NCBI GenBank assembly: GCA_965649825.1
Contig: OZ287695.1
Coordinates: 186,001 to 250,000 of the forward strand
Direction of reading: 5' to 3'
DNA: 64,000 nucleotides
Origin: Penicillus capitatus
Lineage: Eukaryota > Plantae > Chlorophyta
The notes under the pieces: model-generated
Database searches by the model: none
What the model was told of the DNA's origin: nothing
Seen by the model: only the letters and a program-made list of their open reading frames with translations
In this document: positions 1 to 48,360 of the stretch, in pieces
Layout of the letters: each line of letters starts with the position of its first letter
How positions within the stretch are numbered: the first letter of the stretch is position 1
Made by a program: the position numbers and the translations under genes

Positions 1-2426
1 ACTTGGAGGCACCAGCGTTGACGAGAGTCTAGATTTCGCAGTCAATCATCACAAAAGACCCATGCCTGATTACCTGTGCTATTTCTAAATGGCCGATGGA
101 CGACGCTAAGTGCAGAGGAGTATAACCATCAATGGTTTTGGCTGACACATCTGCCCGATGCTCAAGAAGTGTCTGTGGAGCACAACTGCAGCTAACTCGG
201 GACAATGGCATTATGATTCACCTTTACTAAATCCAAGTGTTCATAACGGGATGCGTGGTGCAGGGGAGTCCATCCACGATCATTCGCGGCATTGACTTTT
301 GCGCCATTGCGGAGCAAAACCTTCAGACAGAACCCTTTAGTCAGGACATCTGCATAGTCAAGAGAACCTTTGCAGCATCAAGGCGTCCTTTATTTGCTGC
401 TTCATGCAAGGGAGTCCAACCAATGTTGTCAACCGCATTCACGTTGGCTCGGTGGTTTTCACACAGAAGCTGTGCGAAGAACACACGTTGATAGGCGACT
501 TAGAAACAAAGGAATCACGAACAGGTTACCTTCACAATGTCAGCATGGTCGAATCTAGAAGCAAAGAAGACAGGTGTCCGTCTATCGACATCCACTGCTT
601 CCACCCCTGCTCCATTTGCAATGAGAACCTGATGTGTCTCATCGCATAAGAGTGCTACTGGGACAACTTAATTCCTCACTTCTGCAACTTGATGGTGGCC
701 GAAACCAGCTGCTTTGTGCAAGGACGTCGCTCGAATTGAATCTACTGAATTTACGTTGGCATTCGATTCCAACAGAAACTAAACCACAAGGCATTAAGAT
801 GGCAATGTACTCTTGCTGGTTTGGTGGAAAAGCTTGTTAGCAGCATACCCTGGTAACGTGGATTGATCCTTCTACTGCTGCCACGATCAACGGCGTCGAC
901 TGAACGGCGTTTCTGCTATCAACTTTTGCTCCGTGTCGGACGAGAACCTTCACATCAGCATCTGACAGTTTAGAGATCATAACCATGCAAAAATTCCGAA
1001 GGCTCATACATCAGCGCAATCTAACGCATCGTATCCGGCTGCCCAATGGAGAAGAGTCGAGTCCCTGCTTAGTGGATATCCTGACAGATTTGGGTCGTGG
1101 TAGACGGATTCGACATTGAGGCCCTCTAGTAGAACAGCTTCTAGAGTCACGTCGTCGTTATCTCGCAGACAACGAATTGCTTCCTAAAAGCAGATCTTAG
1201 AAATCATTACCGGCCACTAAAGATTTACGCTCAGGAGCTGCTGGTCTGTGAATTGCTTCATACGTTCACGCTCTTGTGCTAGGCGATCCCGTCGATTTTC
1301 ATTCTGCCATCACCATAAAGTAGTGGATAATGAGATGGCGAGAGATGTCATCGGGAACCTTAATAATCTTCGAAATCGTGTCCCAATGATGTCCGACGCT
1401 AGCGTAGACACTTGGATCTTGTAATCTGCACTGTTTTCCAAACGAAGTGATGCCGACGACCAGATCCAGTTCTGGCTTCCCTGCATTGATGTCACCGTTC
1501 GGCGCATTAGGAATCAACAAAGGACCACCAGAATCGCCTATTTGACACATCATTCGTGAATTCAACAGAAGGAAAGTGCATTCACGAGGAATACCGAAGC
1601 ACGTGCTCTGGGACTGATTCGGGGAATTGGCACAGATCATGTGTTTTTTTGGATGGAAGTCCAATGCTTTTGCACACGTATTGATCGGGGCGGAGACTAA
1701 GTTGTTCGCCATCTGCAGATAACGTGGTGCTTCTTTGTCTGTCGGTTTCTGCACCCCCCATCCAACAGCTGTGAACTTTTGACCCGCTCCAAAAGGGGAG
1801 ACTTGTCGAGCGAATGAAGGCAATGGGACGTCGACTTCTCCGTCAAGTTCGAGGACGGCGATATCGTTGCCATTGCGACTATTTCCCGTCCAGGAGCGGT
1901 GTGGATGTTTCTTTGCAGTTTTGAATCTCTATTCACCAAACGCGTTGCATTTCAGTCATTTCGCGACATGTGCACTCACTCGAACCAAATGGAGTCTTTG
2001 TCGGTCATTAGCGTTGCAGTGGACCTCGGGGCTTTGGTCAACCAGCTGTGAACCGTTGCAGGTAAGACAGTGTGCCGCTGTGATCAACCATCTGCGGCGA
2101 ATCACCACACCAGTGCACTCGCACACCTTATTATCCACTGTCTCCGAAGTTAATAGACAGACATAAGGAAACCGGCTCCTCGGCACATTCACTCCCTGTC
2201 CGATATAAACAATGTGACTCACGGGCGTCACGTGCCTAACATGGGCTGCCGTTACCCCTCTGATTATCGGATGGCCTTCGTTGGAAATAGAATCCGTTCC
2301 CGTCCCTGCGAAAAATGACTGTCGCCGACGAGGACGGTTCATATGGTAAAGACCTGTGTCGCCGAGAGTCGCAACCCATCCGATGGCGAAGAGAACAAGC
2401 ACAGTTTTCGCGAAAGCGTCACCCAT
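1..2426 (-). CDS. Secreted trypsin-like (S1) serine protease fused to an ankyrin-repeat array (T1); 3' end runs off the window
   Basis: The signal peptide is [22 protein letters not shown], and the spliced protein has TAAHC, DIAVL and GDSGGP. A phase-0 linker exon ([10 protein letters not shown]...LLS) leads to a 174-nt N-cap exon (1183-1010), six ankyrin exons and the start of a terminal exon TLVNAGASK (28-1). All introns are GT-AG and in frame. Confidence 0.9.
74..947 (-). repeat. Six single-repeat ankyrin exons of T1
   Basis: Exons are 947-849, 778-680, 628-530, 469-368 (102 nt), 320-222 and 172-74; the other five are 99 nt. All are phase 0, e.g. [33 protein letters not shown]. Confidence 0.92.
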
Positions 2427-28164: not shown

Positions 28165-29141
28165 GTTAGAAGCACATGTTATTTTGTGCGTTCACGGGTG
28201 TCTCTCGCGAACGATTCTACATGTCGCTTATTTTAGTCACTTTGTCAGAGTCTTCTATGATAGAAGCAGCAGTTGCCTATTCTCTCCATGCCAAGGTGTT
28301 GAAGAAGCATAAAACATCTATTCCACTTACCTCTCTCTATATCTGTCTTCAAGTTGAAATGGACGTTATGCTTGAAGTGTCGTATCATGGGCTCGATGTT
28401 CTTTCAAAAGTCCGGACGTTTAAAGAACCGCTCATTGTTTTAGACGAAATAAAGTTTCGAAAGCATAATTCTTGAATCTGTCTGTTTAGGTTGCGCTTTG
28501 CTCGGCCAGATGGAAAACGTATTCTTCTTTGACGAGTGTGCGAATTTCTACAGATTCGTGTCTTCGCACAAACTGTCATTTGCTCTGCATGTTCACGAAA
28601 ACCATTAAGGATTATCGATTGTGGGGATTAGCCGCATGTTGCGCACAGTTTGAAAGATCGAGTCACGCCGCGTTCGCGTCGTCTCGCGATCGAATTCTAT
28701 TCGAACGCTAACGGAATCCGACGTGACGTGTCGATGAGCCACAGAGAATAGATCGTCGAAAAGATTTGGTTTGCATCACTTGAACAGACCGAACGAAGTT
28801 CACTTATTCAATCTACGTTTCGTGTTCATTCGCGGCTTACAGGAACGAACGGGCTCTGCACGTCAAGGAACCTACCCGACCTGAGCAGGTTTGCGCGCAC
28901 AAGTTTGAACATAGTCGGTCTTATGTGGACATACGCCTCTGTTTGCCTTTTCGTCAGCAGAGGGTATCTGAACACGCACACTTCCGTTTCTACGCCACAT
29001 TCGCGGCTTCGGATCTGCGACGGTTCTCGCCTGAAAAGCCCCTGCTCCGAGCTGCCTTTCTGAAGTCACCCGCCCTGCGACAGTCCGAAGGTCACCATTG
29101 GCATCCTTCCAAAGGACTGCTGAGCGCATGACGTGTATAGA

Positions 29142-30506
29142 ATGGGAGGCAGATTGGCGAGCGTGATTCTCTTGATCCTCTCACTCTTCTGGCGCCCAGC
29201 ATTCAGTGACACAGGTATCTGTATGGCAGATAGCGTTTTCTGGCTAACAATATGTCTCCCTTACAGGGTCTGCCGGGAAATCGGACGGGCCGGACCAGTA
29301 TGCGAACATTCGCAGAGTAAGATGGCCGTGTTCTGCGGATTCTGCATGCTGAGGTATATCTTGTCTGCATGGACAGGGAGTGACTGTCAGCGGAGAACGC
29401 TTTCCGTACGTGTGCTACGTGTCCGTCACCAAACGAACCTTCAGTCCTCCTGTTTCTTCGGGGCATTACTGTGCTGGAGTGCTGTACCGCAGAAAATGGG
29501 TGATCACCGTGGCGCACTGCGTCTACGAGGTCGATGGAATCGTCGTCAAGCCCACACCGACTGTCTACTGCGGCTTCAACGACCGTTACAGAAAGTACAC
29601 AGCCCAAGTGAGCACTGATACGCGTGGAAGCGGACTGAGGTCGGCGGTTCTTGGTGGCAGTCTGCCAATGCGAAGAGAACACATCTGCACGATTCTTGGA
29701 CGGGAGACAGGCTTGACGGCTACGACATTGCCGTGGTCGAGCTGGAGAAAGAGATAGATCTCGACGGGCCCGAGGTCGCCGAACGGGACGTCGAGTTCAA
29801 CGACGATCAGAAGTTCGCGACGGTTGCATGGGGAAGAGTCTCGGACACCAAGAGGGCTCGCTATCTGCAGATGGCCGACAATCTCGTCTACGTCTCGCCG
29901 GAAGAGTGCAGAGAGCACTACGACGATCTCTCCACAGAGTCGCCTTGGATGTGCGCAAAATCGGCAGATCAGGAGCAGGACAGCTGTCGCGGTCGAACAC
30001 GCAGATCCGATTCCTTGTGCGGATGCAAACCCCCGCGTTGGTCGTTGCAGGTGACTGTGGAGGTCCACTGCTGATTCCTCACATGCCAGGGGGCGTCATC
30101 AAAGCGGGAGATCCGAAACGTGACTGGGTCGTCGGCATCAAAACCTACGGGATCATAGAATGCGACGGGAAGAATCCGGACGTCTACACCAGAATCGCTC
30201 CCTTTTGGGGCTGGATTTCGGGCATCATCGAAAAGGTGACGCATCTGACCCTCCAAATGACTCCGCGCTCGATGCCGTTCTTTCATGCAGGATGAATCTT
30301 CTGCGAAGGAGAGGCATGGAACGTCAGGACGTGAGGACGCACTTCCGCAGACTGTCGAAGACGGCGTGTTCTTCACTGTAAGTCGCCGGCAAGATGAGTG
30401 AGCTGTTTATACAAGAGGCGCGTGTGGTTAGGAAACAGTCAAGTCCGCGGAGAGAGATGATGGAACGAGATCGGATGTGGTTCGTGCGGACGGTTCGCAT
30501 TTCTAG
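29142..30506 (+). CDS. Secreted trypsin-fold protein T2 with catalytic Ser replaced by Cys (GDCGGP)
   Basis: The signal peptide is MGGRLASVILLILSLFWRPAFS, with TVAHC, DGYDIAVVEL and spliced QDSCRG-DCGGP (TGT at 30056-30058). A short acidic tail ends at TAG 30504-30506. Confidence 0.88.
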
Positions 30507-32264
30507 GACACTGGTCAGCATGGCGCAAAGAGGATCGCTTAGATCACACAGGCTGCCATGCTTTAGTATGATCTCTACTGACTGCTTCCGGGCGACAGTA
30601 GACTATTCAATGAGTCGTCTTTTCTGTTTTGGATTCGCTTCAATGGCTGTGAGAGTGACCATCGGAGTTGCGGTGTCAGCCTCTGTTTTTCAAGAAGGGA
30701 TTCTCAGTATCGTCTGAGTGCTGTATTGGTGGTTTTTCAGACGAACGATTTTATTATTTGTTCGCTCTATCTGATAACAGAGGTTCTAATGTCTTCCCTC
30801 AGCATTGAGAACATTGGCCAGGCGATGCCGATCAAATCCGTTTGAGACCCAGACGGGAGAGATCGAATGCGACAATACATGCCAATCATTACCGACTATG
30901 AATGGAAGGGTAGGAGATAAAGTCAAGAGCGCTACAGTCGACGTGCTTGCCGCTCTATGAGTCATGTCGTGGTCGCCAACAATGTAAGCGATTGGAGCAC
31001 TTCTTCGTTGTTTCTGGCCGAACAACTTTAATCACTTCGGTACACTGTTGTGGCGATCATAGGCAGTCGCGAAGATGTGACATAAGGCGATATGACGGCT
31101 GTCACTCCTTCACAGCGGACATCATGTAACAAAGGTGGGAAGGCGCTCTATAAGAGAAAGTTTTGCCAGGAGCAGTTAATTTAAAGTTCATGGTGCGAAA
31201 CAAAAAACAGATCTATTTGTAATTACCCGGAAGAGTGTAGCCTTTTGCAGTTTCAACTGTGGTTCGCTTATGAATGCAATTCGTGTCTGGTATTGTTGCT
31301 CCAAGCATGTTTTTTGTGAAAAAATATTAAGGCGTTAGCGGGGATGTTTCGATACGATAACGGGACGCGGCGAGTTTTCGGATACAAAAATGTTACGTGA
31401 CGGATGCTGCAGAGCCACTTGAGCCGGAGCTTCGGTCAGAAGAAGTCTAGAGCACAAAGGATCACGTAGGTACGGAGTAAAACCAACGGCAGAACCAATT
31501 GAGCTTCTCTGGTTATTCATCATTTCTTAGAGAAATTCCGCTCGAGGCTGTGGAAGGTTTCCTGGTATAATCCCGTCGCGATAACTTAAAGATCCTTCAG
31601 TCGTTAACGAAGAAAACGATGTTGCTCTAAAAGAGCATCGAACACGCGAATTCAGACTATTTGTAATATACTGAGATAGGTGATTTGATCATAGCTACCG
31701 CAAAAACCGTAACCATCCCATTTTCTGTCGTGCGGAGAAGCGTGTTCCTTTTGCAAATACGAGCGGAGAAACTTTGAATCTGACGGGATACAAATTCGTG
31801 AAAGCTGCATTTCGATAACAAGAACTTACCAACGACAGAAACTCTGTTTCCCTAACGCCACCCGATATTCGAACGAAGTTCCTCGTTCCTTAACACCAAA
31901 GGCGGATCGCAATCGTAAGCGTATGATGCTGACACAGTATCGACAGAATGAAACCATTTATCTCGTTTAGTTTTGTGACGCTAGTTTAAAAATTGCCCGG
32001 AATTGTTTCTGCGAGCCACTTGATCGTGGAGAAATCGGACATACAAACTCAGACGCACTTCTCTGAGAGAATTTGCTATTACCAGCCTTTGCACCTTCCA
32101 CACCAGTCCGACGCGCACGCTTCGTTCGGTGCCTTGTCGACAAAAACGCATTCGACCGGATGCACCGTTTGGAAGGTCGCGGTTCCACGTCGATACTTTA
32201 AAGAAAGCCCAAAGCCTAACCAACGTCTGCACGGCGTTATCTGAAGCTCACGAAGGTCACTGCG

Positions 32265-33509
32265 ATGTCTCACAGAATGCGAAGGACACTAGCAAGAGCG
32301 ACGCTGGTGATCTTTACAGTCTTACGGTTCACGATCCTCGCAAGCGCAGTTCAGCGTAAGATCTCACTCAGTGGACGGCAAAGACAACGCTTCGTGCAGG
32401 AATGGAAACTGTTTCTGAGTCGACGGACCAGATCCCGAACATAGGCGGCGTAAAGCGACCGACGATAGACGAACCCCTGCGGTTACGATATGTATTGTGT
32501 GTTGCGCAGGGCGACGATGCGCCGCCGAACCGTTTTCCTTACGTGTGCTATCTGTCCATTGCGAGAGAGACTCCAGATGATCCCGCATCCGATCCCAAGA
32601 GAACATACTGCACCGGAATTCTGTTTCTGAAGGAATGGGCGATCACGGCGGCGCACTGCGTCGATATGGAGACAGATGAAAAGCCGGTCGGGAGAACCCC
32701 CACAGTCTGGTGTAACTTGCCCGAACGCAGTAAACGGCACGAGATACAAGTTAGGATTCATGGGCTGGAGTGGAGCGCATCGACCTGCGGCATTCTGTCT
32801 GCAGGGTGTGAGCACAGCAGCCATATACTTACACGAAAAATGGAGTGGGGATAGCCACGATGGCTATGACATCGCCGTGCTGAAGCTCGATGAGGCTTTC
32901 GATCTTCCAGTGCCCACTTTTGTTCACGAGACTCGCCATTTCGACGAGAGGCGAGAGTTTACTGCCGTCGGCTGGGGACGGGACTCGAACGACAGAAAGC
33001 CATCGCGCCTGCAGATGGCAAATAGCTTGAGGTATCTGTCGAACGATGTGTGTGGCAAACGACTCCATTTCGAAGACAGTCTCCCCATCATCTGCGAGCA
33101 ATCGCCACATCATGCTCAGGACAGCTGCAAAGGTTGTTTACTCCATGAGCGTGTCTTCATCGAGAGAAGCGTTTCGCTGTTTTGGCAGGGGACTCTGGAA
33201 GTCCATTGCTCATTCCTGATAAGGCAAAAGGAAGAATGAGCTTAGGAAACCCAGAACACGATGTCATCGTTGGCATTAAGTCGTTTGGAAAGAAGAGCTG
33301 CGACGGCAAAGGTCCAGATGCTTATGCAAGCGTCGGTCCTGTTTGGGATTGGATTATAGATACCGTCCACGAGGTTCGACATTCGATGATCCTTCATGAC
33401 ACTGTCCTCTCATTGCGATGCCTTGGTTCAGAAACAAACTCCCGCAAGGACGAACGGGGAGAGTTTTCCACCAGAGGACAGCGAAGACCTTACCAGAGTC
33501 CGAAAGTAG
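32265..33509 (+). CDS. Secreted trypsin-like serine protease T3
   Basis: A hydrophobic N-terminus is followed by PNIGGG, RFPYVC, TAAHC, DGYDIAVLKL and QDSCKG-DSGSP. Intron positions are shared with the paralogues. Confidence 0.88.
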
Positions 33510-34924
33510 AACACTCTTCATCTTACGATGCAAACAAGAAGAAGAGTGAGACTTGAAGAGAAGCCTGGTCCAGGGGTGATTTACTCCAGGGGGGTTAAAG
33601 TCAATGATGTGAGAAGGGACAAAGCAGCAGTGTTTGTAAACAACTTGCACAGCCGTTGAGCTGACGACCAGAATCGGGACAACAGAGACGTCTTTGGCAT
33701 CCGACCCATGACGTGATAGTGACGCAGAATTCGCTGGTTTCGATGTGCAAAGCGAGGAAGGATATCAAGCGCGGAAGGTTGGGAAGCACAACGTGCTATC
33801 GATTACCGACCACAAAACTGAAGATAAGCCTTTCAGTGGGCATATGCAGTTAGTTGACACTCCGTTGACTTCCTGTTATTCATATCGCATAGCCATAAGA
33901 CCATTTGATTGAAATAAACTCTCAGTGTGTCGATGGACCCTCAGGTCATGACCGTTTCTCAGCGAATCGGGGCTCGTCCTCCATGAAAGAGATCGCCGCA
34001 GATAGACGATGTGCCAATTCCTGTGGACAGACAGCTGAAGCAGAAGAATCTACACGTCCAGGAGCGAGGCGACAACTCTTTCCATCCTATCAAGACGAAG
34101 GGCGACTGCCCAAACGTTAACTCCGATAGCGCGAGAGGATGACACCGAAAAGCGTTCGAAAGTGCTACTTCTCGTGACAGCTCGGCAATCGATTAGCGCT
34201 CGTGTATCCGACGAGACAGATAATCATAGTTTTAGAGTTTCATTGCGTGTTATGCTTTCAATGTGTTTCGTACAGAGGAACACGCTTGCATCACTCGAAA
34301 GGATAGAAGAGAAAAGGGCCGACCAACACAACTTGTCACCACCGCTTACTCGCTCTTTCTGTCGAAACAAGTTGTACCAGCTTACGTCACGCAGTAGACA
34401 GACTAAAAAACAGTGTTTTTCTTTCCGCGCACTTAACAGCAGTAATGGACGCCGACTTTCAAAACTCCAACTCTTAACATCGCTGAGCGCGACTTCCGTT
34501 TTGCCGTCTCTTGCGCGGTAGCTTTTGGAGCTGCCATCTTTCCCGTAAGGAGCTTATCGTGTGCTCCTGTCCATTTCTCATCGACTCCAAATTATTAAGC
34601 CCAGGGATGACACATCAATTTGACAGGACGCCGATTCGTGGAGTCTATCTCTCTCACACCGACATTCGACTCATTCAGAAACACAATAGAAAGTTACTCG
34701 AAATCTACTGCGATGCGGAACCTACGAGCTGTGCGAAATAAATACATAAAAGCGATTTGATTTCGCAAGTGCACACGCAGTTCGTTATTTCTTGACTGCT
34801 TTAAACGCCAACGATTTCAACGCTCACTCTTTTGTTTTAAACGCTTAACGGCACACTCTACGCGACCGCCGGTCCTCCGCAAGGAAACCTTTGTTTCGAA
34901 ACGTCTTACACAAAAGAAAACGAA

Positions 34925-37900
34925 ATGGATTCTCCCCATAGAAGTTGTCGCAGCCGACTGGTGTCGAGGAAAACGAACAACGGAATTGTCAAAGCGATAC
35001 TCCTCGTCTTTACCGTCACGTGGCCTACGGCTTACGCCGGTGTCGGTTTTCGCTTAGGCGGCACAGGTAACATCTTCTTCTTCGAAGATAGCGCTGACGG
35101 TGACGCTCAGAGAGAGGGAAAACGTCTCCCAAAAACTATCGCCCAAACATTCTAGCGGCACGTGCCCGACTCGACATCAAATCCTCCTGATTGACGTGTA
35201 CTGACTGCGCTGTCCAGGGAATGGATGTGACCGAAGGAAGATTTCCTTACGTGTGTGATTTGACTTATCTGACAGCTGATGAAGAATACGTCTGTACTGG
35301 AATTCTGTTTCGTCAGAGGTGGGTGATTACGGCCGCACATTGCGTCGAACCAGACGGAGAACAGCCCATCGGACAAACCCCTACCGTACGATGCGGCTTC
35401 AGCGACCTCTCCGAACAAGACTTGGCACCAGTAAGCGTTCATCCGTCGTGAGCGTGTCAAGACGCCAAAATGGCACCTGTTTCAGACACGAAGCACCGTA
35501 TCGACTTTTGCACACGAATCGCGTTTGCAGAATATGCACCATGACTATGACATAGCCGTGCTCGAACTGGACGATCCCATCAACCTTGCCGAGCCTATCT
35601 TAGCCCGTCAAGATTACGACTTCGACACGAGTCAAAACTTCACAGCTGTCGGCCGGGGAAAAACGGAAACTGGCCAATATCCGAATATCTTGCAGATGGC
35701 GACTGGAATGTCTTATATGGCGCCGACGAAATGCAGCAAACGTCTGGAATATGAAATCAAGGATGGAATGCTTTGTGCTAAGTCACTGGACCGTAAGCAG
35801 GGAATTTGTGACGGTCAGTCAGCGCCTCATCCGTCTTCTTCTCTCTAAACATACTGGTGGACCTTTTAGGAGATTCTGGAGGTCCCTTGCTTATTCCGGA
35901 CAGCACGAATGGCAATATGAGCAATGGAAATCCAAGACGAGATCGAATCGTCGGCATCGCCTCGTTTACTCGGGGAGTATGCTCGGGTAAGAATCCAACT
36001 GCTTACACGAGCATCGGGTACTTTTTGCCCTGGATTACGGCCGTCATCGATCAGGTTGTCAGCTCGAATGGTCATGACATCTGTTTTCCGAAACGTACGT
36101 GTTCGCGTCGCAGAATGTCTATCCGAGCAGTGCACGCAAACGAAGTCTCGATCAAGAAGAGCAAAGCGCGACAAACGTCTATGACAGGACGCAGATCGAG
36201 GTGAGGCATGCGTATCCAAAACCGGACGAAAAACAAGACGCTTCTGTCACCGAAGGATGCTATCACTCTCATAATAGAAGACGACGACGTGGGACTGAAG
36301 AAAGTCCTTAAAAAGGGTCTCTATGTCGACGCTGTCTATCACAACGCCGAGCTGTCAGGGTATCCGATGGGGCCAGAGTCAACACTGATCCACTGGACGG
36401 CGGCATACGATGCGAAGAAATGTGCAAAGGTGTGTCGCAAAACAACGACCGTCGCCGTTGGAAGCGCTTCCCATAATTGAGCTGTCTTGTTATATCGCGA
36501 ACCTTCCTCGCACTCTGCTATGTTCTTCTCAGGTTCTTGTAAAACACGGCGCGGGAGTGGACCGCGTGACCGCTGACGGAATAACGCCCCTGCACGTCGC
36601 AGCTTTTTTCGGATCTGTTTCCGTGGCAAAGGTTGGTACAACCATTGAAGAAATAATAAAGAATTCCTTTGCCGACAAGATTATGAGGGAATGCCTTTGT
36701 TAGGTCCTTATTGAGTTCGAGGCTAGCGTCAATGCAGCAGACGCGATTGGGGCAACTCCACTGCATACAGCAGTAGAGTACGGCAACGACAGTGTGGTCA
36801 AGGTATCGATGACGCCTTGCTTCAGACCTCCGCCTCACTACAAAGACGTGAAGGTGCTCGTTGAAAATGGAGCTGACGTCGACGCCGTTGACGACGGCAA
36901 GTGGACGGCGTTGCATCATGCTGTGTACTACGACCGCCTCGAGATCGCGCAGGTCGGTATTGGCCATTGGCGGGCGCCCTGCCTGCGCTGCGTACATCTC
37001 CGACACTTCTTCCATAGATGCTTGTCGACAGCGGTGCAGACATTGCTGCGCGAACGAATCAACGCTGGACTGCGGCGCATGTGGCCTCGCGATATGGACG
37101 TACTGACATCACGAGGGTGATCCTTTGTTCGCTTTTGGTTTCTTGATTACGAAAGTCATCCGACAGGTTCTACTCGACAAAGGTGCCGACGTCAAAGCCG
37201 TGACAGAGTCTGGACGGACGCCTCTGCATCTCGCGTCGTTCGGTGGGCATCTTAACACAGCAAAGGTGCATCTACAATGCGCGTAGCCCATCTCTGGTTG
37301 CAGTGGTGAATTCGACAGGTGTTGTTAAAGAACGGTGCAGAGGTGAACGTTGCTGACGCCATTGGACGGACGCCACTTCACGAAGCAGCACGTAGCGGTC
37401 ATTTTGCAACCGCTGAGGTCGCCGTCTTTCTCTTTCGCTTTGTGGAGTTCGTCTGTGTTTAGATCTTGGTGCGTGAAGGGGCAGATATCGACCGAGTCGA
37501 CAACGAATTATGGACGGCTCTGCTTTTTGCATCCCGTTACGGAAACGTCAAGATCGTCGAGGTCTCCTTTGCCACTTTTTGTGACTGTGAATGATCAGAT
37601 GACGACAACAGATGCTGATACGTAAGGGGGCAGACGTTGATGTCATACGGACAGATGGATCTACTGCGCTTTGCATGGCATCAATTTTCGGATACAGCGA
37701 AATTGTGAACGTAATACTTGCTTCGTCTTATTTTTGTGTTACGAGGATCATTCAACAGGCCTTAGTAGAAGAGGGTGCTGCCGTCGATGTTGTTCTAAAA
37801 AACAGCGGCACCCCACTCCACTTTGCATCATTTAACGGACACCTGGAGATAGCGAAGGTGATCGACGTTGTGCTCTTTCTTCTCCGGCAGTAGAACGCAT

Positions 37901-39969
37901 CTGTCGACAGGTTCTCATCGCTGGAGGCGCGAATGTCGACGCCAAAGTCTTTGACGAATGGACGTCACTTCATTTGGCGTCGCGTTATGGACATCTTGAA
38001 ATCGTGAAGGTGAAGAAGATTCGCTTTCGCTTTCTCCTCCGTAGACACCATTCTACTGCAGGAATTGCTTGCCGAGGGTGTCGATGTCGACGTCTTGACG
38101 GACAAGGAGTGGACACCACTTGTACTGGCGGCTTCCTCTGGACATTACAAAATAGTGAAGGCAAGTATAATCTCTCCACTAGGACTCGCCGATCAACCAT
38201 ACACTTGCTAGGCTCTTTTGAAGAGTGGCGCAGACCCTGATATCGCAGATGACTATGGATGGACTGCACTGCATTACGCCGCACGTGAAGGATACTTCGA
38301 GATCGCAAAGGTTACCCGTGTCTTTCGAGCCTTTTGGAAAACGTGGCTTCGTTGACAGATACTACTCGCCAAGGGAGCGGATGTTGACGCTATAACGATC
38401 CTAAGTTGGACACCACTTCATGTCGCATCGTCATACGGACATTTGGCAATCGTGAAGGTCGTTTGACTGCTTCCCAATTCCTACCTCTACTGAAGCTTCC
38501 TGGCAGATACTAGTTGCAGCGGGAGTAGATGTCAATGTTGGAACATACCTTCGAAAGTCGCCGCTACATTTAGCGTCAGAATCCGGACACTTCGAGATCG
38601 CGCAGGCACGTCCAGTTTCCTTGCGCCCTCGCTGAGATTGTTTCGTAGTTTCTGTTGGAAAATGAGGCGAACCCGAATGCTGCCAACCAGTTTGGATGGA
38701 CTCCTCTTCATAGTGCTGTAGAAAATGGCCGTGCAGAGATCGTCGCGGTAAATCATCGACCTCCGACTTCCTGTCTCAGTAGAGGATTGCTGTCAGATTA
38801 TGATTGCTGCGGGAGCAGATGTTAACGCAACAACGGGAGATGGGCGGAGTCCGCTCCTTAGGGCTTCAGAAGAAGGAGATTCTGAGACTGCACGGGTAGA
38901 CAATTTTCTCTTCTGTCTGCCCTGATCGAGGTCATTCTTCAGATTCTTTTGGATAACGGCGCTGACGTAAATGCCTATGACTCAGAGGGAGAGACTTCAC
39001 TCCACAAAGCGGGAACACGTGAAGATTTTGACCTTGCAGAGGTCTGCCTGCGTCTGTCTCTACTCGTGCTATCCAGAACAGTTTCTTGACAGCTTCTGAT
39101 CGAAAGAGGAGCGGATGTCGACGCCAAGGATGACGATGGCTGGACTCCACTTCTTATAGCATCGGATTATGGATATTTCAAGATCGCAAAGGTAAGACAG
39201 GGCGTCACCCGGTTGGTTAACCTAGGAGATCGTTCGACAGGCTTTGTTGGACAATGGGGCGGATGTAAATTTGGCAATGAGAGGTTTCACTCCGTTGTAT
39301 TTTGCATCAATCGAAAATGCCGACATTGTGGAGGTGGGTTGGTCTTTGAGATCATGCACGTTTCAGCGATTACGGATATTCTTAACAGCTTCTGTTGAAC
39401 AATGGTGCGGACGTAAATGCCACGGACAGATACAAACGGACAGCACTTCATGAAGCAGCACAGAGTGGAGAGGTTGAAATCGTAGAGGTCATCTTTCGAC
39501 GTTTTAGCTTTCGGCAGCAGAAATGCGAAGATGTAGGTTTTGATAAGCAAAGGAGCAGAGATCGATGCTACTACGGAAGAGAATTATACACCTCTCTTTC
39601 TGGCGTCGCAAAGTGGATACTGCGATACTGTGAAAGTCGGCCTCTCATTTTCCTTTCTGTACCATGTCCACTGTTTTTTGCAGGTTTTGATCGACCACGG
39701 TGCGGATGTCTGTGCTGTCGATAGCTTCAAGCGGACAGCTTTGCACCACGCGGTTTCCCGTAATTATCTCGATGTTGCGCAGGCAAAGAAACTGTTGTTT
39801 CTGATGCACGACTATTGATCACCTGCGACCTTAGGTCCTTGTTGCTGCCGGGGCGTCCAAGTCTCGCAAGAACAAGGAAGGGAAAACACCTCTAGATGTC
39901 ATCCCTTTTGCGTGTCACGGTTGTTCGAAACCAAAACTAGCAGCTCTGAAGAAACTCCTGACAGTTTGA
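34925..39969 (+). CDS. Trypsin-like serine protease fused to 22 single-exon ankyrin repeats (T4)
   Basis: The N-terminal hydrophobic segment precedes TAAHC, DYDIAVL and GDSGGP. A linker exon leads to a 174-nt N-cap exon (36256-36429), 22 ankyrin exons (36533-39782) and a terminal exon (39835-39969) starting VLVAAGASK. The frame is continuous when spliced. Confidence 0.92.
36533..39782 (+). repeat. 22 single-repeat ankyrin exons of T4
   Basis: Exon starts are 36533, 36704, 36854, 37018, 37167, 37319, 37463, 37612, 37759, 37911, 38062, 38212, 38359, 38507, 38649, 38797, 38943, 39093, 39241 (93 nt), 39389, 39537 and 39684. The other 21 are 99 nt and all are phase 0. Confidence 0.93.
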
Positions 39970-39999
39970 TTTCTCTTTCCTCCTAAATGAAGTGCAGAC

Positions 40000-42290
40000 A
40001 AAAGTTACTCTGACCTACACCCAGCTGTTTCTTTAACACCCCTACCTCCGATCCAATCTTGTGTCGTCTTCGAACGTGGTCCCGGATCCAGGATACCGAA
40101 GTTCATCCCTCAAGAACGGGCTCCTTAAATCGGCAGCAGGGGATGTGAATGACTGATCACCTCTCTCATCCTCTGAGCAAAGGAAGGCTACGGATCTGTA
40201 TCGTCCCTCGTCTTTCCTTATAGCTCAGCTGCAGGCACAAAGAACGAGTGGTGTATCTGTGCTCATTTGAAGCCTATGTGTTGATGTGACATCTATAGGG
40301 GTAGAATCTGCGCTTCTTCACTTGTGGAAATCAAAGAGGGGCCCAGCATCATCATCTGCAAACTGTGGTGGATGATGACACGCATCCAATCTTGCGTTAA
40401 CACTGTCCAGAAAAGCACGGATATCTAAAAGTGAAGTTAAAGTCGAGTGCTTTTCAAGTTAGAAGAATCCATCAAGTTAGATTGTATGGACTCCTGCGCA
40501 AACGCCGATGGGTCGCCTTTCTCTTTGACGGACTCGTTCTTCATTCCTCCTCCGCTACCTGCCACTCATACAAGACGCGTTGAAGGTCTCATCCGTTCGA
40601 TGTTGAGGAGTAAAGGGTGCGCGGGGACTCAAGACAGAGAACTACGTACCGGTAAGGGTGTCTAGTCGCAAAGCGATGTTTGCGGCCATCGGGGGGTCGA
40701 ACGTGCTTTGATGTGACGTCGTCGATCCTTCACCTCACTTTGGTTCGATCTACCTACAGTACGACACGGATATCACACTTTTGCCTAATAGGTGGCGCAC
40801 ATTATCTTGCTGCGCATCCAGGGCATCATGCGGTCCAGAAAATGGACCGGCGTCAGCATGAGAGTCCGCCTAACCATCAGACATTGCTCCGCCAAACCGA
40901 GACTCTCTTCCAAAGGAGGATCAGTCTCTTTTCCCCGGATCCTGACAGACCATTTCGTTGCAGCTGATCGCATGAGGATGGAGCAGTTCGTTCACATTGA
41001 GTGATCCTCGTCTTCGCATCGATTAAACGTCCGTGAACAACTGTCCAAGATTGATTGACCAGGCACACTCATCCAGGTGCTTCTGAAGAGAGCTGTCGAT
41101 GTCAACATGCGATGCAGCGATGGAAAAATGCAGAATGCTCAAAAAGAAAGGCACCATTGAGGAATTGATGGACTTGGAAGAGTGAGAAAATGTGATCGTC
41201 GTCCATCGATATCTGCTGGCTCCTGGATGAGGTTTTCACCTCTTGGATGCGCTGCAGCGAGAGATCAATCGATCCGGCATTGCGATGTGTCCGGTATCTC
41301 TCTTGATACTTCCTGGCAGCTTCCTACGGTCACACTTCCCTAATGACGCGGATCGAGCCATGCTGTCAGCAAAGCTAACAGCCGAATGTCCAAAATGGAA
41401 CCTCGTACGTGCTTCGACCACTCCAATCGCTCTTCTGTCATCAATCAGATGCGGCCGGATTCAGTCGAGAGACACCCAGCCGTTGTTCAGAAACTACAAA
41501 GAGAAACTGTGCAATCATCAGCACCTGCTGTGTGCGTGGAAAGGCTTCAGGAAAATTGAAAGCGTTGCCGGTTCTCTCTCTTTGTGATGACTTCCATCCG
41601 TCACTTTACATCCCAGCTCTATTAGCTACGAAATGTCACCATAATCGTAAATTTCAGTTGATGGGATCGGTGGAAATGGGTCATGGCGGTCGAATGCGAT
41701 GCAATTTGCATGAAACGATAATCATATCGCTATTTTCGCGAAACGACGTTGCTGCTGTTGCGTCGATGCAGCAGACGTCGAAACTCGTGTGGTTCGTATG
41801 CGAACCATTCGGCGGAGCAGAGCGAAGAGGAGCACATTAAGGAACATCGTGTTTCTGCTAATGTCGATGGCCGCTGATCATTTCCGGCGAACCGTCGAGT
41901 GCATTGTCGCTGTGGAGTTCGGATAAAAACTGAGCATCTGACAGAGTGGCCTATCTCAGAACAGCTTCAGTGACGGCAGCACTGTTTGAACGGAATTGGG
42001 TCCTTCGACACTTCTCATTGGCATCAAATGCTATACGGCCGATTGTGAAGCCCGGTGGACTAAAGCATGGAGGGAGGCCTGGGAAATCAGTTTCGCAGAG
42101 TACTGTGCTGTAATCGTGGATCGTGACCCCACTCCCAGTGGTGGAAGGATGTGTTTGGCTTGCCGAGAGATAGCGTTGTTGAACTAATGCAGCTGATCCG
42201 GAGACAATCAAGATTTGTCCCGTCGATGGGTCTATGAGCAGAAGTCCTGTCGACTGAGGAATGGATTCTTCGGTGGGATACTCGACATGA
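40000..42290 (-). pseudogene. Possible decayed, intron-containing gene of unknown family
   Basis: Several GT...AG blocks of about 50-75 nt separate protein-like stretches (e.g. AATKWSVRIRGKETDPPLEESLGLAEQCLM, YKSHVEYPTEESIPQSTGLLLIDP). Stops interrupt them and no family was recognised. Confidence 0.3.
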
Positions 42291-42300
42291 GATTTGTATA

Positions 42301-42937
42301 CATCTGCCGACGCTGGCGAAGGGGTGCGTCGACGAATACAATGGTGTGCGTGCAGAGCGATAAAGGCGATCGGTCGCATTGTTTCAGCTGTGCCGCAATA
42401 CGCCGACGATTATCTGCCGACGCTGGCGAAGGGGTACGTCGACGGACACGAAGACGTGCGCTATGCTGCAAGAAAAATTTTGGAAAGTGTAAAACCTAGA
42501 GAGACTATTCCCTCGGCAATATCATTTACATCCACTAATAAAAGAAGATCTTTATTCTTCTTCATGCAAAACTCATACACGTAAGGTCTCCCTACAAAAT
42601 CTAAAACGCTTCCCTTTATCTTGCATACAACTTCTTCACAAGCGATTGGAAAATGGGACAAGGAAGCTATCGATGTGTTTATCGAGAAGTTGAGACAAGA
42701 GTGTTGATATACGTGAAAGCGGGCGCAAAAGTAGAAAGTAGTCTTTTTTACAGAATGCGAGAGTTTTTTGCAAAACACCGTTTTAGACTACGCAGCATGA
42801 CGTCATGATGCCATCATGCTTCTTGTAATGATGCGACTGGTTCTTTTTCCTTTCTTCTTCCCACTTCATCGTCAGGTCCACGACAGTGTGATGAGGAGTT
42901 TCCCGGGCTTCTAGAGAACATTGGTATCAAAGAATAG
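42301..42937 (+). pseudogene. 5'-truncated relic of a NACHT-HEAT paralogue (last ~1.5 HEAT repeats and C-terminus)
   Basis: It has a 111-nt repeat (42301 vs 42412) and a 3' end nearly identical to 27980-28164. It carries a frameshift, a premature TAA and an insertion. Confidence 0.88.
42705..42885. mobile_element. 181-bp solo-LTR-like insertion
   Basis: It is absent from the paralogous site at about 28113, has TG...CA termini and is flanked by a direct repeat GTGT (42701-42704, 42886-42889). Confidence 0.75.
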
Positions 42938-42946
42938 GTTGGAAGC

Positions 42947-43152
42947 TGACGGGTACGCGAGAACGGTTCTGGCCCTACGGACCGGACAGACTGTCCGCTT
43001 CCTGACGTGACAGGAGTCCGCGTGGGCCAGGGGTATTTATGTGACAGGCCGCACCATGCTGTAGTCTTTGCATCGACTCAGCACCGTCTCTTCCGACTTC
43101 GTGTACGCGTCGGCGCGTTCGCGTCGCGCCAGTTGTCTGCGTATCCCCGACA
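42947..43152. mobile_element. 206-bp solo-LTR-like insertion
   Basis: It is absent from the paralogous site at about 28169 and has TG...CA termini and a 5-bp TSD GAAGC (42942-42946, 43153-43157). It also has imperfect terminal inverted repeats and an internal TATTTAT at 43034. Confidence 0.85.
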
Positions 43153-44119
43153 GAAGCACATGTTATTTTGTTCGTTTACGAGTATTCGATTGCAAACGAT
43201 TCTACATGTCGATTGTCTGAGCTATTCTTCCAAACTCTTCCACAAGGAAGCGTTAGTTGCCTATTCTCTCACTGTTTATTTTTGAAGGACCGTAAAACGC
43301 GTGTTCTACTCCTCTCTTTCTCAAATTTCAAGTCAAAGTGGACGTTGTGCTTGGTGTGTCGTATCATGGGCTCGATGTTCTTTCAAAGGTCCGTACGTTT
43401 AAAGAACCGCTCATTGTTTGAGACGAAATAAAGTTTCGAAAGTATAATTCTTGAATCTGTCTGTTTAGGTTGCGCTTTGCTCGGCCGGATGGAAAACGTA
43501 TTTTTCTTTGACGAGTGTGCGAATTTTTACAGATTCGTGTCTTCGCACAAAATGTCATTTGCTCTGCATGTTCACGAAAACCATTAAGGATTATCGATTG
43601 TGGGGATTAGTCGCATGTTGCGCACAGTTTGAAAGATCGAGTCACTCCGCGTTCGCGTCGTCTCGCGATCGAATTCTATTCGAACGCTAACGGAATCCGA
43701 CGTGACGTGTCGATGAGCCACAGAGAATAGATCGTCGAAAAGATTTGGTTTGCATCACTTGAACAGACCGAACGAAGTTCACTTATTCAATCTACGTTTC
43801 GTGTTCATTCGCGGCTTACAGGAACGAACGGGCTCTGCACGTCAAGGAACCTACCCGACCAGAGCAGGTTTGCGCGCACAAGTTTGAACATAGTCAGTCT
43901 TATGTGGACATACGTCGCTGTTTGCCTGTTCGTCAGTGAAAGGTATCTGAACACGAAGACTTCCGTTTCTACACCGCGTTCGCGGATTCCGATCTGCGAC
44001 GGTTCTCGCCCGAAAGCCCCTACTCCGAGCTGCTTTACCGAGGACACCCGCCCTGCGACAGTCCGAAGGTCAGCATCGGCATCCTTCCGGAGGACTGCTG
44101 AGCGTGTGACGTGTACAGA

Positions 44120-45528
44120 ATGGGAGGCAGATTGGCGAGCGTGATTCTTTTGATCCTCTCACTCTTCTGGCGCCCAGCATTCAGTGACACAGGTATCTGT
44201 ATGGCAGATAGCGTTTTCTGGCTAACAATATGTCTTCCCTACAGGGTCTGCTGTGAAATCGGACGGGCCGGACCAGTATGCGAACATTCGCAGAGTAAGA
44301 TAGATGACCGTGTTCTGCGGATTCTGCATGCTGAGGTATATCTTGTCTGCATGGACAGGGAGTGACTGTCAGCGGAGAACGCTTTCCGTACGTGTGCTAC
44401 GTGTCCGTCACCAAACGAACCTTCAGTCCTCCCGTTTCTTCGGGGCATTACTGTGCTGGAGTGCTGTACCGCAGAAAATGGGTGATCACCGTGGCGCACT
44501 GCGTCTACGAGGTCGATGGAATCGTCGTCAAGCCCACACCGACTGTCTACTGCGGCTTCAACGACCGTTACAGAAAGTACACAGCCCAAGTGAGCACTGA
44601 TGCGCGTGGAAGCGGACTGAGATCGGCGGTTCTGGTGGCAGTCTGCCAATGCGAAGAGAACACATCTGCACGATTCTTGGACGGGAGACAGGCTTGACGG
44701 CTACGACATTGCCGTGGTCGAGCTGGAGAAAGAGATAGATCTCGACGGGCCCGAGGTCGCCGATCGGGACGTCGAGTTCAACGACGATCAGAAGTTCGCG
44801 ACGGTTGCATGGGGAAGAGTCTCGGACACCAAGAGGGCTCGCTATCTGCAGATGGCCGACAATCTCGTCTACGTCTCGCCGGAAGAGTGCAGAGAGCACT
44901 ACGACGATCTCTCCACAGAGTCGCCTTGGATCTGCGCAAAATCGGCAGATCAGGAACAGGACAGCTGTCGCGGTCGAACACGCAGATCCGATTCCTTGTG
45001 CGGATGAAAACCTGTGTTGGTCGTTGCAGGTGACTGTGGAGGTCCACTGCTGATTCCTCACATGCCAGAGGGCGTCATCAAAGCGGGAGATCCGAAACGT
45101 GACTGGGTCGTCGGCATCAAAACCTACGGGATCATAGAATGTGACGGGAAGAATCCGGACGTCTACACCAGAATCGCTCCCTTTTGGGGCTGGATTTCGG
45201 GCATCATCGAAAAGGTGACGAATCTGAACCGCCACACGCCTCCGCGCTGGATGCGGTTCTTCGTTGCAGGATAAAGCTTCTACGAAGGAGAGGCGGGGAA
45301 CGACAGGACGTGAGGACGCACTTCCGCAGACTGCCGAAGACGGCGCGTTCTTCACTGTAAGTCGCCGGCAGGATGAGTGAGCTGTTTGTGCAAGAGGCGT
45401 GTGATCAGGAAACAGTCAAGTCCGCGGAGAGAGACGACGGCATAAAACCGGAAGCAGCTCGTACGAGTGGTTCGCATTTCGAGGATACTAGTCAGCATGG
45501 CCCAGAGAGGATCGTGGAGATTGCATAG
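44120..45528 (+). CDS. Secreted trypsin-fold protein T5 (near-identical duplicate of T2) with GDCGGP
   Basis: The exon structure matches T2, with TGT at 45035-45037. The tail is 15 aa longer than that of T2. Confidence 0.88.
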
Positions 45529-46371
45529 TCAGACATGCTTTGTTACGATCCCTGCCGATTGCTTTCGGACGGCAGTCGATTCTTCGATGCATCGCCTTTT
45601 TCTGTTTTGGATTCGCTTCAGTGGCTCTAAGAGTGGCCATCAGAGTTGCGGTGTCGGTCTCTGCTTTTCAAGAGAGGGTTCTCAGTGTCGTCTGAGTGCT
45701 GTCTTGGTGGTTTTTCAGACGAACGATTTTATTATTTGTTCGCTCTATCTGAGAACGGAGGTTCTAATGTCTTCCCTCGGCATTGAGAACATTGGCCAGG
45801 CGATGCAGATCAAATCCGTTTGAGACCCAGACGGGAGAGATCGAGTGCGACAATACATGCCAATCATTACCGACTATGAATGGAAGGGTAGGAGATAAAG
45901 TCATGTGAGTTGCAGTCGACGCGCTCTCAGCTCTATAAATCATATGGCAGACGCCAACATAATGATCGATTGAAACACTTCTTCGTTGTTTCTGGCCTGA
46001 CAACTTCAACATCTTCCGTACACTGTTGCTACAGTCGCAGGCACCGTTACAGAGATATAACGTAGGGCGTTGTGACAGCTGTCACTCATTAGCAGCGGGG
46101 AAGAGTGTGTAACACAATAGGAGATCGAGTGCCATGTAACAGCAAGTCTTTGTGAACAACTGTCTGATCCCAATACGACCATGATGCTACTAATAGAAAC
46201 TGAACGGGTGATTGTAACCATTTATCGTTGCTGCGTTCCTGACCTTAAGCTTGCTTGTGCGTCACAGCACGTTATTTGGAAAGTCGCGGTTCAACAGCAA
46301 TTCCTCGAAGAAAGCCGAGAACGAACGAACGTTTGCGTAACATCGTTCTAAAGGACACGAAGGTCACTGCG

Positions 46372-47611: not shown

Positions 47612-48360
47612 AAATGGAACACTCTTCATTGCATGTTACAAACAAGAAGAGTGAGATGTGGAGACAACACAAGTCCTGGGGTGATGATTTACTCCAGGGG
47701 GGTTATTATTATTATTTGAGAAACGGCAAGGCAGCTATGTTTGTAAGTAGCTGACAGAGACAGTCCATTGACGACGACCAGATTGATGCTATCGACAACC
47801 GATCTGTGACGTGACGTTTACAGCTTCCATTCGCGTGCAGCCGAAAAGCTCACAGCAAAGCATCGCATCTTTCCAACTCTCGCACTTGTCGCTCTGGAAA
47901 CAGTTTCACGATTAACTGCGCTAGAGGCAACCCGAAGTCCTCGCCGTCATAAGGCGATCGCGCCTGCGTCCTCAATCAAACCTTTTGTCGTCGTTTTTTT
48001 TTTTCAAACGCGTTCGACTGCGCAGCTGTATGTGATGCAAACCGAGTTTTTATGACAAGTAAATGCCGTAAGAATGGCCTTGCCTGGTGATCTACAATAG
48101 TTTGAGGTTGAAGAACGTTGATGTGTAGGAACAATGATATTCACCAGACAACAGTACTAGGCATCACCAGCTTCACGGCTACTTTTCATTGTTGTTCTCT
48201 CACTCGAGAGACCTCGAGTCATGTTTTTCTGAACGAGAGCTCACAAGCGTGCACTTTGGCGCGAGCGAGGAGCCAACGGCTTCGACAGGGACGTTCGGCA
48301 GTGAAGTACGACAAACGCAACAACGGTGCGCGCACTGACGACCCTGAACTCGCCGCGTCC

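What the first reader, a model, noticed from the sequence alone, without database searches (positions are those of the whole stretch)
36256..39969. Modular one-exon-one-ankyrin cassette array: a natural DARPin-like library on a protease (22 vs 6 repeats)
Both fusion genes share a homologous 174-nt N-cap exon (DAITLII...[16 protein letters not shown] vs EAIRCLR...[16 protein letters not shown]) and a C-cap exon starting xLVxAGASK. Between them T4 has 22 and T1 has 6 symmetric phase-0 exons of one repeat each (99 nt, with single 93- and 102-nt variants), separated by 43-72 nt introns. Any exon can be skipped, duplicated or swapped without frameshift. Established: brown-algal ROCO-LRR and NB-ARC-TPR genes diversify by shuffling single-repeat exons, and animal ankyrin genes also have 99-nt exons, so the layout alone does not prove active diversification. 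Inference: a combinatorial variable-recognition system coupled to an extracellular protease in a green alga.
Basis: partly seen in the sequence, partly recalled or inferred. Interest (0 to 1): 0.9.

Follow-up and report, generated by a model that had tools for sequence, protein, structure and literature searches.

The report
Secreted trypsin fused to ankyrin array
A gene for a secreted trypsin-like protease carries a 24-unit ankyrin domain with one 99-base exon per repeat, but the array is old and identical in number and order across four related genomes, so it is a fixed scaffold and not a shuffling library.

Summary
T4 (34925-39969, +) encodes a signal peptide, an S1/trypsin domain with an intact His-Asp-Ser triad, a linker, a 174-nt N-cap exon, 22 single-repeat phase-0 ankyrin exons (21 of 99 nt, one of 93 nt) and a C-cap exon. 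T1 (2426-1, -) has the same plan with 6 repeats, one of them 102 nt.

The interpretation as an active combinatorial library is not supported. The repeats are only about 50% identical at the DNA level (maximum 69%). There are no relic or orphan exons. Four T4 copies were compared: the window, its alternative haplotype, and two haplotypes of a sister species (dS about 0.4). All have exactly 22 exons in the same order, the same intron positions and the same three GC-AG introns. The T1 orthologue keeps 6 repeats, including the 102-nt one. dN/dS is 0.3-0.4, and 0.63 at binding-surface positions.

The gene belongs to a lineage-specific family of signal-peptide proteins with capped ankyrin arrays. 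Paralogues have 2, 5, 6, 15 and 22 repeats, and most carry a trypsin domain.

Isoform diversity by exon skipping remains untested. "Green alga" is plausible but unproven.

The parts
34925..35041 (+). T4 exon 1: start codon and a signal-peptide-like N-terminus ([39 protein letters not shown]). The donor choice is uncertain.
   Evidence: Gene model. The exon is 77% identical and gap-free in the sister species. The signal-peptide reading is by inspection only.
35218..36054 (+). T4 trypsin (S1) domain in three exons: 35218-35430, 35486-35813 and 35870-36054. It has the motifs TAAHC, DIAVL and GDSGGP.
   Evidence: Pfam Trypsin E 1.5e-33. Model. Exon lengths are conserved in L003. omega is 0.36.
36114..36200 (+). 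T4 linker exon (29 aa).
   Evidence: omega is 0.77 against the sister species.
36256..36429 (+). T4 N-cap exon (174 nt, 58 aa), the family signature ...STLLHWxAxxDAxxCAK.
   Evidence: omega is 0.06-0.10. A profile of the two N-caps finds 26 proteins (E<=0.001), 21 of them short ORF/contig products with a full-length N-cap match.
36533..39782 (+). T4 array of 22 single-repeat phase-0 ankyrin exons (R1 36533-36631 to R22 39684-39782). 21 are 99 nt; R19 (39241-39333) is 93 nt. Introns are 43-72 nt. GC donors follow R11, R14 and R22.
   Evidence: table; Pfam. One-to-one orthologues are present in L007, L008 and L010.
39835..39969 (+). T4 C-cap exon (VLVAAGASK...[10 protein letters not shown]...LLTV, then stop) with two conserved cysteines.
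1359..2426 (-). T1 signal-peptide exon (2426-2256) and trypsin exons (2195-1980, 1928-1595, 1537-1359).
   Evidence: Reading, tblastn, ORFs.
1010..1303 (-). T1 linker exon (1303-1229) and N-cap exon (1183-1010, 174 nt).
74..947 (-). T1 array of 6 single-repeat ankyrin exons: 947-849, 778-680, 628-530, 469-368 (102 nt), 320-222 and 172-74.
   Evidence: The orthologue in L006 has the same 6 repeats, including the 102-nt one.
1..28 (-). Start of the T1 C-cap exon (TLVNAGASK), cut by the window edge.
   Evidence: The full C-cap is seen in the orthologue at L006 7210-7338.

Best explanation
T4 and T1 belong to a lineage-specific gene family. Each encodes a secretory-pathway S1 (trypsin-fold) serine protease joined by a short linker to a capped ankyrin solenoid. 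The solenoid has a specialised N-cap, n internal repeats and a C-cap with a cysteine pair.

The arrays grew long ago by tandem duplication of an exon-plus-intron unit of about 150 nt. That is why every repeat sits in its own phase-0 99-nt exon, with the boundary at the same point of the repeat (...EIVK|VLL...), and why this gene is far more intron-dense than its neighbours.

Since then the arrays have been inherited as fixed-length, position-specific scaffolds under purifying selection. Each repeat has its own conserved identity.

Inferred, not shown: the solenoid (24 units in T4) is a long protein-binding platform that tethers or aims the protease at particular partners. Paralogues of different length (2 to 22 repeats) would serve different partners.
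For: Architecture:
- Pfam finds Trypsin plus Ank, and the triad motifs are present.
- The same plan is seen in T1, T7 with 2 repeats, T8 with 15 repeats and T9.
- P0094 has 5 repeats and lies on an mRNA-like 1.6-kb contig.

Old age of the repeats:
- Mean exon-to-exon nucleotide identity is 49.5% and the maximum is 68.7%. Neighbouring repeats are no more alike than distant ones.
- Tandem Repeats Finder sees no array.

Stability:
- The sister species (two haplotypes) and the alternative haplotype of the window's own species each have an N-cap, 22 exons that best match R1-R22 in order, and a C-cap.
- Intron lengths are nearly the same and the same three GC donors are kept.
- The T1 orthologue has 6 repeats, including the 102-nt one.

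Selection:
- omega is 0.38 over 19 orthologous repeats, 0.63 at the six DARPin-randomised positions and 0.31 elsewhere.
- omega is 0.36 for the trypsin domain and 0.10 for the N-cap.

Other:
- Neighbouring genes are long, nearly intron-less ORFs.
- The closest solved structures are the 24-repeat ankyrin-R/B domain and NOMPC.
Against: - No transcript of T4 or T1 was seen, so constitutive inclusion of all 22 exons is assumed.
- Secretion rests on inspection of N-terminal hydrophobic segments and conserved cysteines. No predictor or experiment was used.
- The 5' exon junction of T4 is uncertain, and the classical IVGG activation N-terminus is not evident.
- No binding partner or substrate is known.
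- The family sits next to NACHT-HEAT (NLR-like) genes. In the window's species the two T4 alleles differ by dS about 0.32 from the promoter to R7 but are nearly identical from R8 on. This pattern is compatible with an immune-type locus.
Confidence: 0.8

Rival explanations
1. One reading: the symmetric single-repeat exons form a cassette library. They are skipped, duplicated or swapped, either somatically, by alternative splicing or over short evolutionary time. This would give a repertoire of recognition surfaces on a secreted protease, as proposed for brown-algal ROCO-LRR genes.
For: - All repeat exons are phase 0 and multiples of 3.
- Paralogues differ in repeat number: 2, 5, 6, 15 and 22.
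- omega is higher at binding-surface positions, 0.63 against 0.31.
- The family lies next to NACHT-HEAT genes at two loci.
- The two alleles are a mosaic. They show deep divergence, a 144-nt identity tract across intron 2 and R3, and a breakpoint before R8.
Against: - Number and order are identical in four T4 copies and two T1 copies.
- There are no recent duplicates; the maximum nucleotide identity between exons is 69%.
- There are no orphan, inverted or inactivated exons. The 43-72-nt introns could not hold any.
- Paralogue T8 is collinear with T4.
- omega is below 1 everywhere.
- The identity tract does not follow exon borders and stays at the same array position, so it is ordinary allelic conversion.
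Confidence: 0.07
2. The ankyrin solenoid has a mainly geometric or mechanical role as a spacer, spring or superhelical turn of defined length, as argued for the 29 repeats of NOMPC. On this view the repeat count itself is what selection keeps.
For: - The count is strictly conserved at 22 internal repeats plus 2 caps in four copies.
- The best structural relatives are the 24-repeat ankyrin domain and NOMPC.
- The literature notes very low indel rates where ankyrin arrays act mechanically (PMC5100051).
Against: - Each repeat keeps its own position-specific sequence under purifying selection, surface positions included (omega 0.63). This points to specific contacts and not to length alone.
- Paralogues with 2 to 15 repeats exist.
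Confidence: 0.1
3. The array is not a real expressed gene, for example a decaying pseudogene or a gene-model artefact.
For: No transcript evidence exists for T4 itself. The 5' junction is uncertain.
Against: - The reading frame is intact through 29 exons.
- All splice sites are conserved across a dS of about 0.4.
- Repeat-exon length differences from the sister species are all in-frame, in R11, R14 and R19; over the first five repeats indels fall only in introns.
- omega is 0.3-0.4.
- A family member appears as a contiguous, mRNA-like contig.
Confidence: 0.03

Closest known systems
Ectocarpus ROCO-LRR and NB-ARC-TPR genes (Zambounis et al. 2012, PMC3341825)
   Same: Each repeat has its own symmetric exon. 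The family is multigene with different repeat numbers. It occurs in an alga. The locus context looks immune-like.
   Different: Those genes show non-coding and inverted relic exons inside introns. Recent duplicates are almost identical except for a recombined repeat domain, and selection is diversifying. None of these was found here. The better analogue is the LRR-kinase class in the same paper, which has one repeat per exon but no sign of shuffling.
Animal ankyrin-R/B/G 24-repeat membrane-binding domain, and NOMPC
   Same: These are the best sequence matches among solved structures (4RLV E 3e-151, 7TW3, 5VKQ). They are long solenoids of about 24 units with a conserved repeat number. From my own knowledge, not checked here, many repeats in the vertebrate ANK genes also lie in single 99-nt exons.
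   Different: There is no spectrin-binding, death or channel domain. Here the array follows a signal peptide and a trypsin domain and has its own N-cap and a cysteine-bearing C-cap. Common descent of the array as a whole has not been shown.
DARPins (designed ankyrin repeat proteins)
   Same: The layout is N-cap, n internal repeats, C-cap. Variability among repeats and between orthologues peaks at the positions that DARPin libraries randomise.
   Different: That variability pattern is generic to natural ankyrin repeats. Here each position in the array has a fixed, inherited sequence. Nothing indicates that a library is generated.
Ostreobium quekettii kinase-trypsin protein (P0079)
   Same: It is the best named relative of the protease domain, at about 31% identity over about 240 aa. 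It shares the family-typical loop GGPLL..P.G....GNPE.D.VVGI.SFG.
   Different: It has no ankyrin array. Its trypsin domains are joined to protein kinase domains. The identity is low.

Membership tests
Ankyrin repeat (Pfam PF00023 / PF12796) | Tandem 33-residue repeats with the TPLH / helix-turn-helix consensus | tested here: met
   Ank E 3.1e-190 in 20 stretches; Ank_2 E 1.8e-175. The consensus of the T4 repeats is [33 protein letters not shown].
Peptidase S1 (trypsin/chymotrypsin fold) | Trypsin domain profile match | tested here: met
   PF00089 E 1.5e-33, residues 39-275.
Peptidase S1 (trypsin/chymotrypsin fold) | Catalytic His-Asp-Ser triad | tested here: met
   TAAHC, DYDIAVL and GDSGGP are present in T4. 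T2 and T5 have GDCGGP instead.
Peptidase S1 (trypsin/chymotrypsin fold) | Zymogen activation that creates an Ile/Val-x-Gly-Gly N-terminus | tested here: inconclusive
   No IVGG-like motif in the T4 model. T1 has ...PIIRGGVNV. The 5' junction is uncertain.
Exon-shuffled repeat receptors (Ectocarpus ROCO-LRR type) | One repeat per symmetric exon | tested here: met
Exon-shuffled repeat receptors (Ectocarpus ROCO-LRR type) | Relic, inactivated or inverted repeat exons within or near the array | tested here: not met
   tblastn finds ankyrin exons only in the coding arrays of T1 and T4 and their relatives. Introns are 43-72 nt.
Exon-shuffled repeat receptors (Ectocarpus ROCO-LRR type) | Repeat number and order differ between close relatives; the repeat domain is recombined | tested here: not met
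   22 repeats in the same order in the window, L010, L007 and L008. 6 repeats in T1 and in L006. T8 is collinear with T4.
Exon-shuffled repeat receptors (Ectocarpus ROCO-LRR type) | Diversifying selection on the repeats | tested here: not met
   omega is 0.38 overall and 0.63 at surface positions. Between alleles it is 0.29.
Exon-shuffled repeat receptors (Ectocarpus ROCO-LRR type) | Alternative inclusion of repeat exons in transcripts | not testable with these tools
   No RNA data for this organism were available.
Canonical ankyrins (ANK1/2/3) | 24 ankyrin repeats followed by ZU5-UPA spectrin-binding and death domains | tested here: not met
   Only Trypsin and Ank families were found. The protein ends at the C-cap.

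The most novel reading that the evidence does not exclude
The fixed genomic array is still used combinatorially at the RNA level. Regulated skipping of the symmetric 99-nt exons would yield protease isoforms with different ankyrin surfaces. These would act with the adjacent NACHT-HEAT (NLR-like) genes and the deeply diverged alleles as part of an algal immune or self/non-self system.
Probability: 0.07. Interest if true: 0.8.

Novelty: new variant of a known kind. Interest (0 to 1): 0.4.

Why it matters
One repeat per exon is a known way for repeat proteins to grow. This locus adds a clean non-animal example in which the history can be read. The ankyrin array is intron-dense in an otherwise intron-poor neighbourhood. 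It was built by duplication of an exon-plus-intron unit and then frozen for a long time.

The domain combination appears undescribed: a signal peptide, a trypsin domain and a capped ankyrin solenoid with a cysteine-bearing C-cap. My searches of the protein collection and of the literature found nothing comparable. It suggests ankyrin solenoids working in the secretory pathway or outside the cell.

The case also shows that frame-neutral, repeat-sized exons alone do not indicate active diversification.

Tried and rejected
- Tandem Repeats Finder on 36200-40000 found no array. The repeats are too diverged.
- Protein search with the spliced trypsin plus N-cap found no relative above 28% identity.
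- A chimeric query of flanking ORFs returned only NACHT-HEAT paralogues and one Ostreobium protein.
- An exact look-up of the 1402-aa kinase ORF found nothing.
It worked through cluster look-ups.
- A single-sequence AlphaFold model of P0094 was unusable (mean pLDDT 38). No structural claim is made from it.
- A donor was sought for the cluster of changes in R13 between the two sister-species haplotypes. No match of 14 nt or more was found in the loci held.
- T1 against T4 repeat collinearity is not significant (7% of shuffles reach it), although R1-R3 best-match R1-R3 at the DNA level.
- Literature searches for trypsin-ankyrin fusions in algae, for 99-bp ankyrin exons and for the sample accessions found nothing usable.
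- The organism could not be named.
Full report
**The observation**

Reading 35500-40800 and enumerating AG...GT-flanked open segments gives the T4 ankyrin region.
- N-cap exon: 36256-36429, 174 nt.
- 22 consecutive phase-0 exons, each encoding one ankyrin repeat. 21 are 99 nt; R19 (39241-39333) is 93 nt.
- C-cap exon: 39835-39969, starting VLVAAGASK and ending in a stop.
- Introns between the repeat exons are 43-72 nt. The N-cap to R1 intron is 103 nt.
- Three donors are GC (after R11, R14, R22).

Upstream exons encode a signal-peptide-like N-terminus, an S1 protease domain with TAAHC, DIAVL and GDSGGP, and a 29-aa linker. The assembled 1136-aa protein scores Pfam Ank E 3e-190 in 20 stretches and Trypsin E 1.5e-33.

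T1 lies on the minus strand at the window start.
- N-cap 1183-1010, 174 nt, 52% identical to the T4 N-cap.
- Six repeat exons, one of them 102 nt.
- A C-cap starting TLVNAGASK that is cut by the window edge.

20 of the 23 T4 introns cannot be read through in frame.

**Context in the window**

The window holds six trypsin genes. Only T1 and T4 carry ankyrin exons. No orphan ankyrin exon exists on either strand.

T2/T3 and T5/T6 are a segmental duplication that includes the tail of a NACHT-HEAT (NLR-like) gene. Neighbouring genes are long, almost intron-less ORFs: a 1402-aa kinase, an EF-hand NADPH oxidase and the NACHT-HEAT gene. One intron per 99 nt is therefore exceptional locally. The simplest explanation is that the duplicated unit was exon plus intron.

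**Age of the repeats**

In-register comparison of the 28 exons gives the following.
- Mean nucleotide identity within T4 is 49.5%, with a maximum of 68.7% (R10/R18).
- Adjacent and non-adjacent repeats are equally similar (50.5% against 49.4%).
- T4 against T1 is about as similar (48.7%).
- T1 R1, R2 and R3 best-match T4 R1, R2 and R3.

Tandem Repeats Finder finds no array. Nothing here was duplicated recently.

**Relatives**

A neighbouring NADPH oxidase ORF led to two ENA long-read metagenome assemblies.
- Window 26208-41193 is 100% identical to ERZ25074695 ctg339180.
- A second contig of that sample, ctg340412, is the alternative haplotype. It is 97.5% identical over window 14.9-27.2 kb.
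- ERZ26696514 holds a sister species at about 80% nucleotide identity and dS about 0.4. Two haplotypes of it were recovered, 98.9% identical to each other.

**Orthologues and alleles keep the array**

Both sister-species haplotypes (L007, L008) have an N-cap, exactly 22 repeat exons and a C-cap. The exons best-match R1 to R22 in order at 56-91% amino-acid identity.

Splice sites, intron lengths and the same three GC donors are conserved. The only length changes are in-frame within exons: R11 is 102 nt, R14 is 105 nt and R19 is 96 nt. Exons are more conserved than introns, 81% against 76%.

The T1 orthologue (L006) has an N-cap, six one-to-one repeats including the 102-nt R4, and a full C-cap. 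The alternative haplotype of the window's own species (L010) also has 22 repeats in order.

**Selection**

Nei-Gojobori estimates against the sister species:

| Region | omega |
|---|---|
| 19 equal-length repeats | 0.38 |
| Six DARPin-randomised positions | 0.63 |
| Remaining repeat positions | 0.31 |
| Trypsin domain | 0.36 |
| N-cap | 0.10 |

Surface positions are relaxed but not positively selected. Replacement frequency follows within-array entropy (Spearman 0.82). This is the generic pattern for ankyrin repeats.

**The family**

| Member | Where | Internal repeats |
|---|---|---|
| T7 | L004; signal peptide and trypsin domain; next to another NACHT-HEAT gene | 2 |
| P0094 | 1576-nt mRNA-like contig; signal peptide and a non-trypsin N-terminal region | 5 |
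| T1 | window | 6 |
| T8 | L006 | 15 |
| T4 | window | 22 |
| T9 | L006; runs off the locus | at least 5 |

T8 is collinear with T4 over roughly its first 12 repeats. The collinear score is 494 against 302 +/- 29 for shuffled order, and none of 2000 shuffles reaches it.

A profile of the two window N-caps against 1.84 billion proteins finds 26 proteins. Most are short ORFs around N-cap exons from metagenomes.

Every C-cap seen has at least two conserved cysteines. The N-cap has an invariant cysteine in the three aligned copies. All four complete N-termini look like signal peptides by inspection. This fits a secretory location but does not prove it.

**An unexpected allelic mosaic**

The two T4 alleles of the window's species were compared.
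- From upstream of the gene through R7 they differ by 6-30% per segment. dS is about 0.32, nearly as much as to the sister species. omega is 0.29-0.42.
- From R8 to the C-cap they are almost identical.
- Inside the diverged part, a 144-nt tract (36795-36938: the end of R2, intron 2 and most of R3) has no mismatch.

These are ordinary allelic recombination or conversion tracts. They do not follow exon borders and they leave number and order unchanged.

The diverged block continues upstream through T3, and T2 is missing from the other haplotype. The HEAT repeats of the NLR-like gene fall to 65-70% identity. The region may hold old polymorphism. This is the only feature that leans towards an immune-type locus.

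**Comparison with known systems**

The Ectocarpus paper defines exon shuffling by three signs: relic or inverted exons in introns, recent duplicates that differ only in a recombined repeat domain, and diversifying selection. It also describes LRR-kinases with one repeat per exon and no such signs (PMC3341825). T4 and T1 match the second class.

By sequence, the nearest solved structures are the 24-repeat ankyrin-R/B domain, NOMPC and DARPins. A conserved ankyrin repeat number is known where array length matters (PMC5100051). The link between introns and repeat growth was treated by Street, Rose and Barrick in 2006. I saw that paper only as a citation.

**Organism**

No close protein relatives carry a name. 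The best named relative of the protease is an Ostreobium quekettii protein at about 31% identity with a shared loop motif. A type II PI4-kinase with a ubiquitin-like domain in the window looks plant-like from my own knowledge. "Green alga" is plausible but not shown.

**Verdict**

This is a real and tidy one-exon-one-repeat ankyrin array on a probably secreted trypsin-like protease, in a new lineage-specific family. Only isoform diversity remains open.

Noticed in passing
window ~29400-30240 (T2) and ~44400-45220 (T5): These two trypsin paralogues read GDCGGP where the catalytic serine motif GDSGGP is expected. The nucleophile serine is replaced by cysteine.
   Followed up: no
window ~27300-33700 and ~42300-47800: A segmental duplication (78-92% identity) covers the tail of the NACHT-HEAT gene plus two trypsin genes. 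The second copy keeps only a HEAT-tail fragment (42294-42584). The sister species lacks the duplication (L007: T4 is followed by methyltransferase ORFs and then the kinase).
   Followed up: partly
window 23884-28164; L004 8432-13810; L001 1-4001: NACHT-HEAT (NLR-like) genes, each preceded by a 513-520-aa ORF, lie next to trypsin or trypsin-ankyrin genes at two loci. Twelve paralogues were found on large contigs. The two haplotypes drop from 97.5% to 65-70% identity in the HEAT repeats.
   Followed up: partly
window 34500-37610 against L010 6860-9990: The two T4 alleles of the same species differ by dS about 0.32 from the promoter through repeat R7. They are nearly identical from R8 on. One 144-nt mismatch-free tract lies at 36795-36938. 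This is an allelic mosaic, perhaps old polymorphism.
   Followed up: yes
L010 240-4900 against window 28200-32400: The alternative haplotype has no T2 trypsin gene between the NLR-like gene and T3. This is a presence/absence polymorphism.
   Followed up: partly
L007 11396-11413 against L008 11393-11410: Repeat R13 of the sister-species T4 carries 10 nucleotide changes within 18 nt between the two haplotypes (VLASRHG against LVAIDNG). No donor sequence was found in the loci held.
   Followed up: partly
window 38161, 38606 and 39783 (donors after R11, R14, R22): Three GC-AG introns out of 23 in the array. All three are conserved as GC in the sister species.
   Followed up: yes
L009 84-1337 (Logan SRR31076174): A 1576-nt contig carries one uninterrupted 417-aa ORF: a signal peptide, a 180-aa non-trypsin region, an N-cap, 5 ankyrin repeats and a C-cap. 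It looks like a spliced mRNA of a family member without the protease.
   Followed up: partly
window 19414-22091 (-) and 12997-14517 (+): An EF-hand NADPH oxidase and a type II PI4-kinase lie beside the NLR-like and trypsin cluster. The kinase has a weak ubiquitin-like domain hit in the sister species.
   Followed up: no
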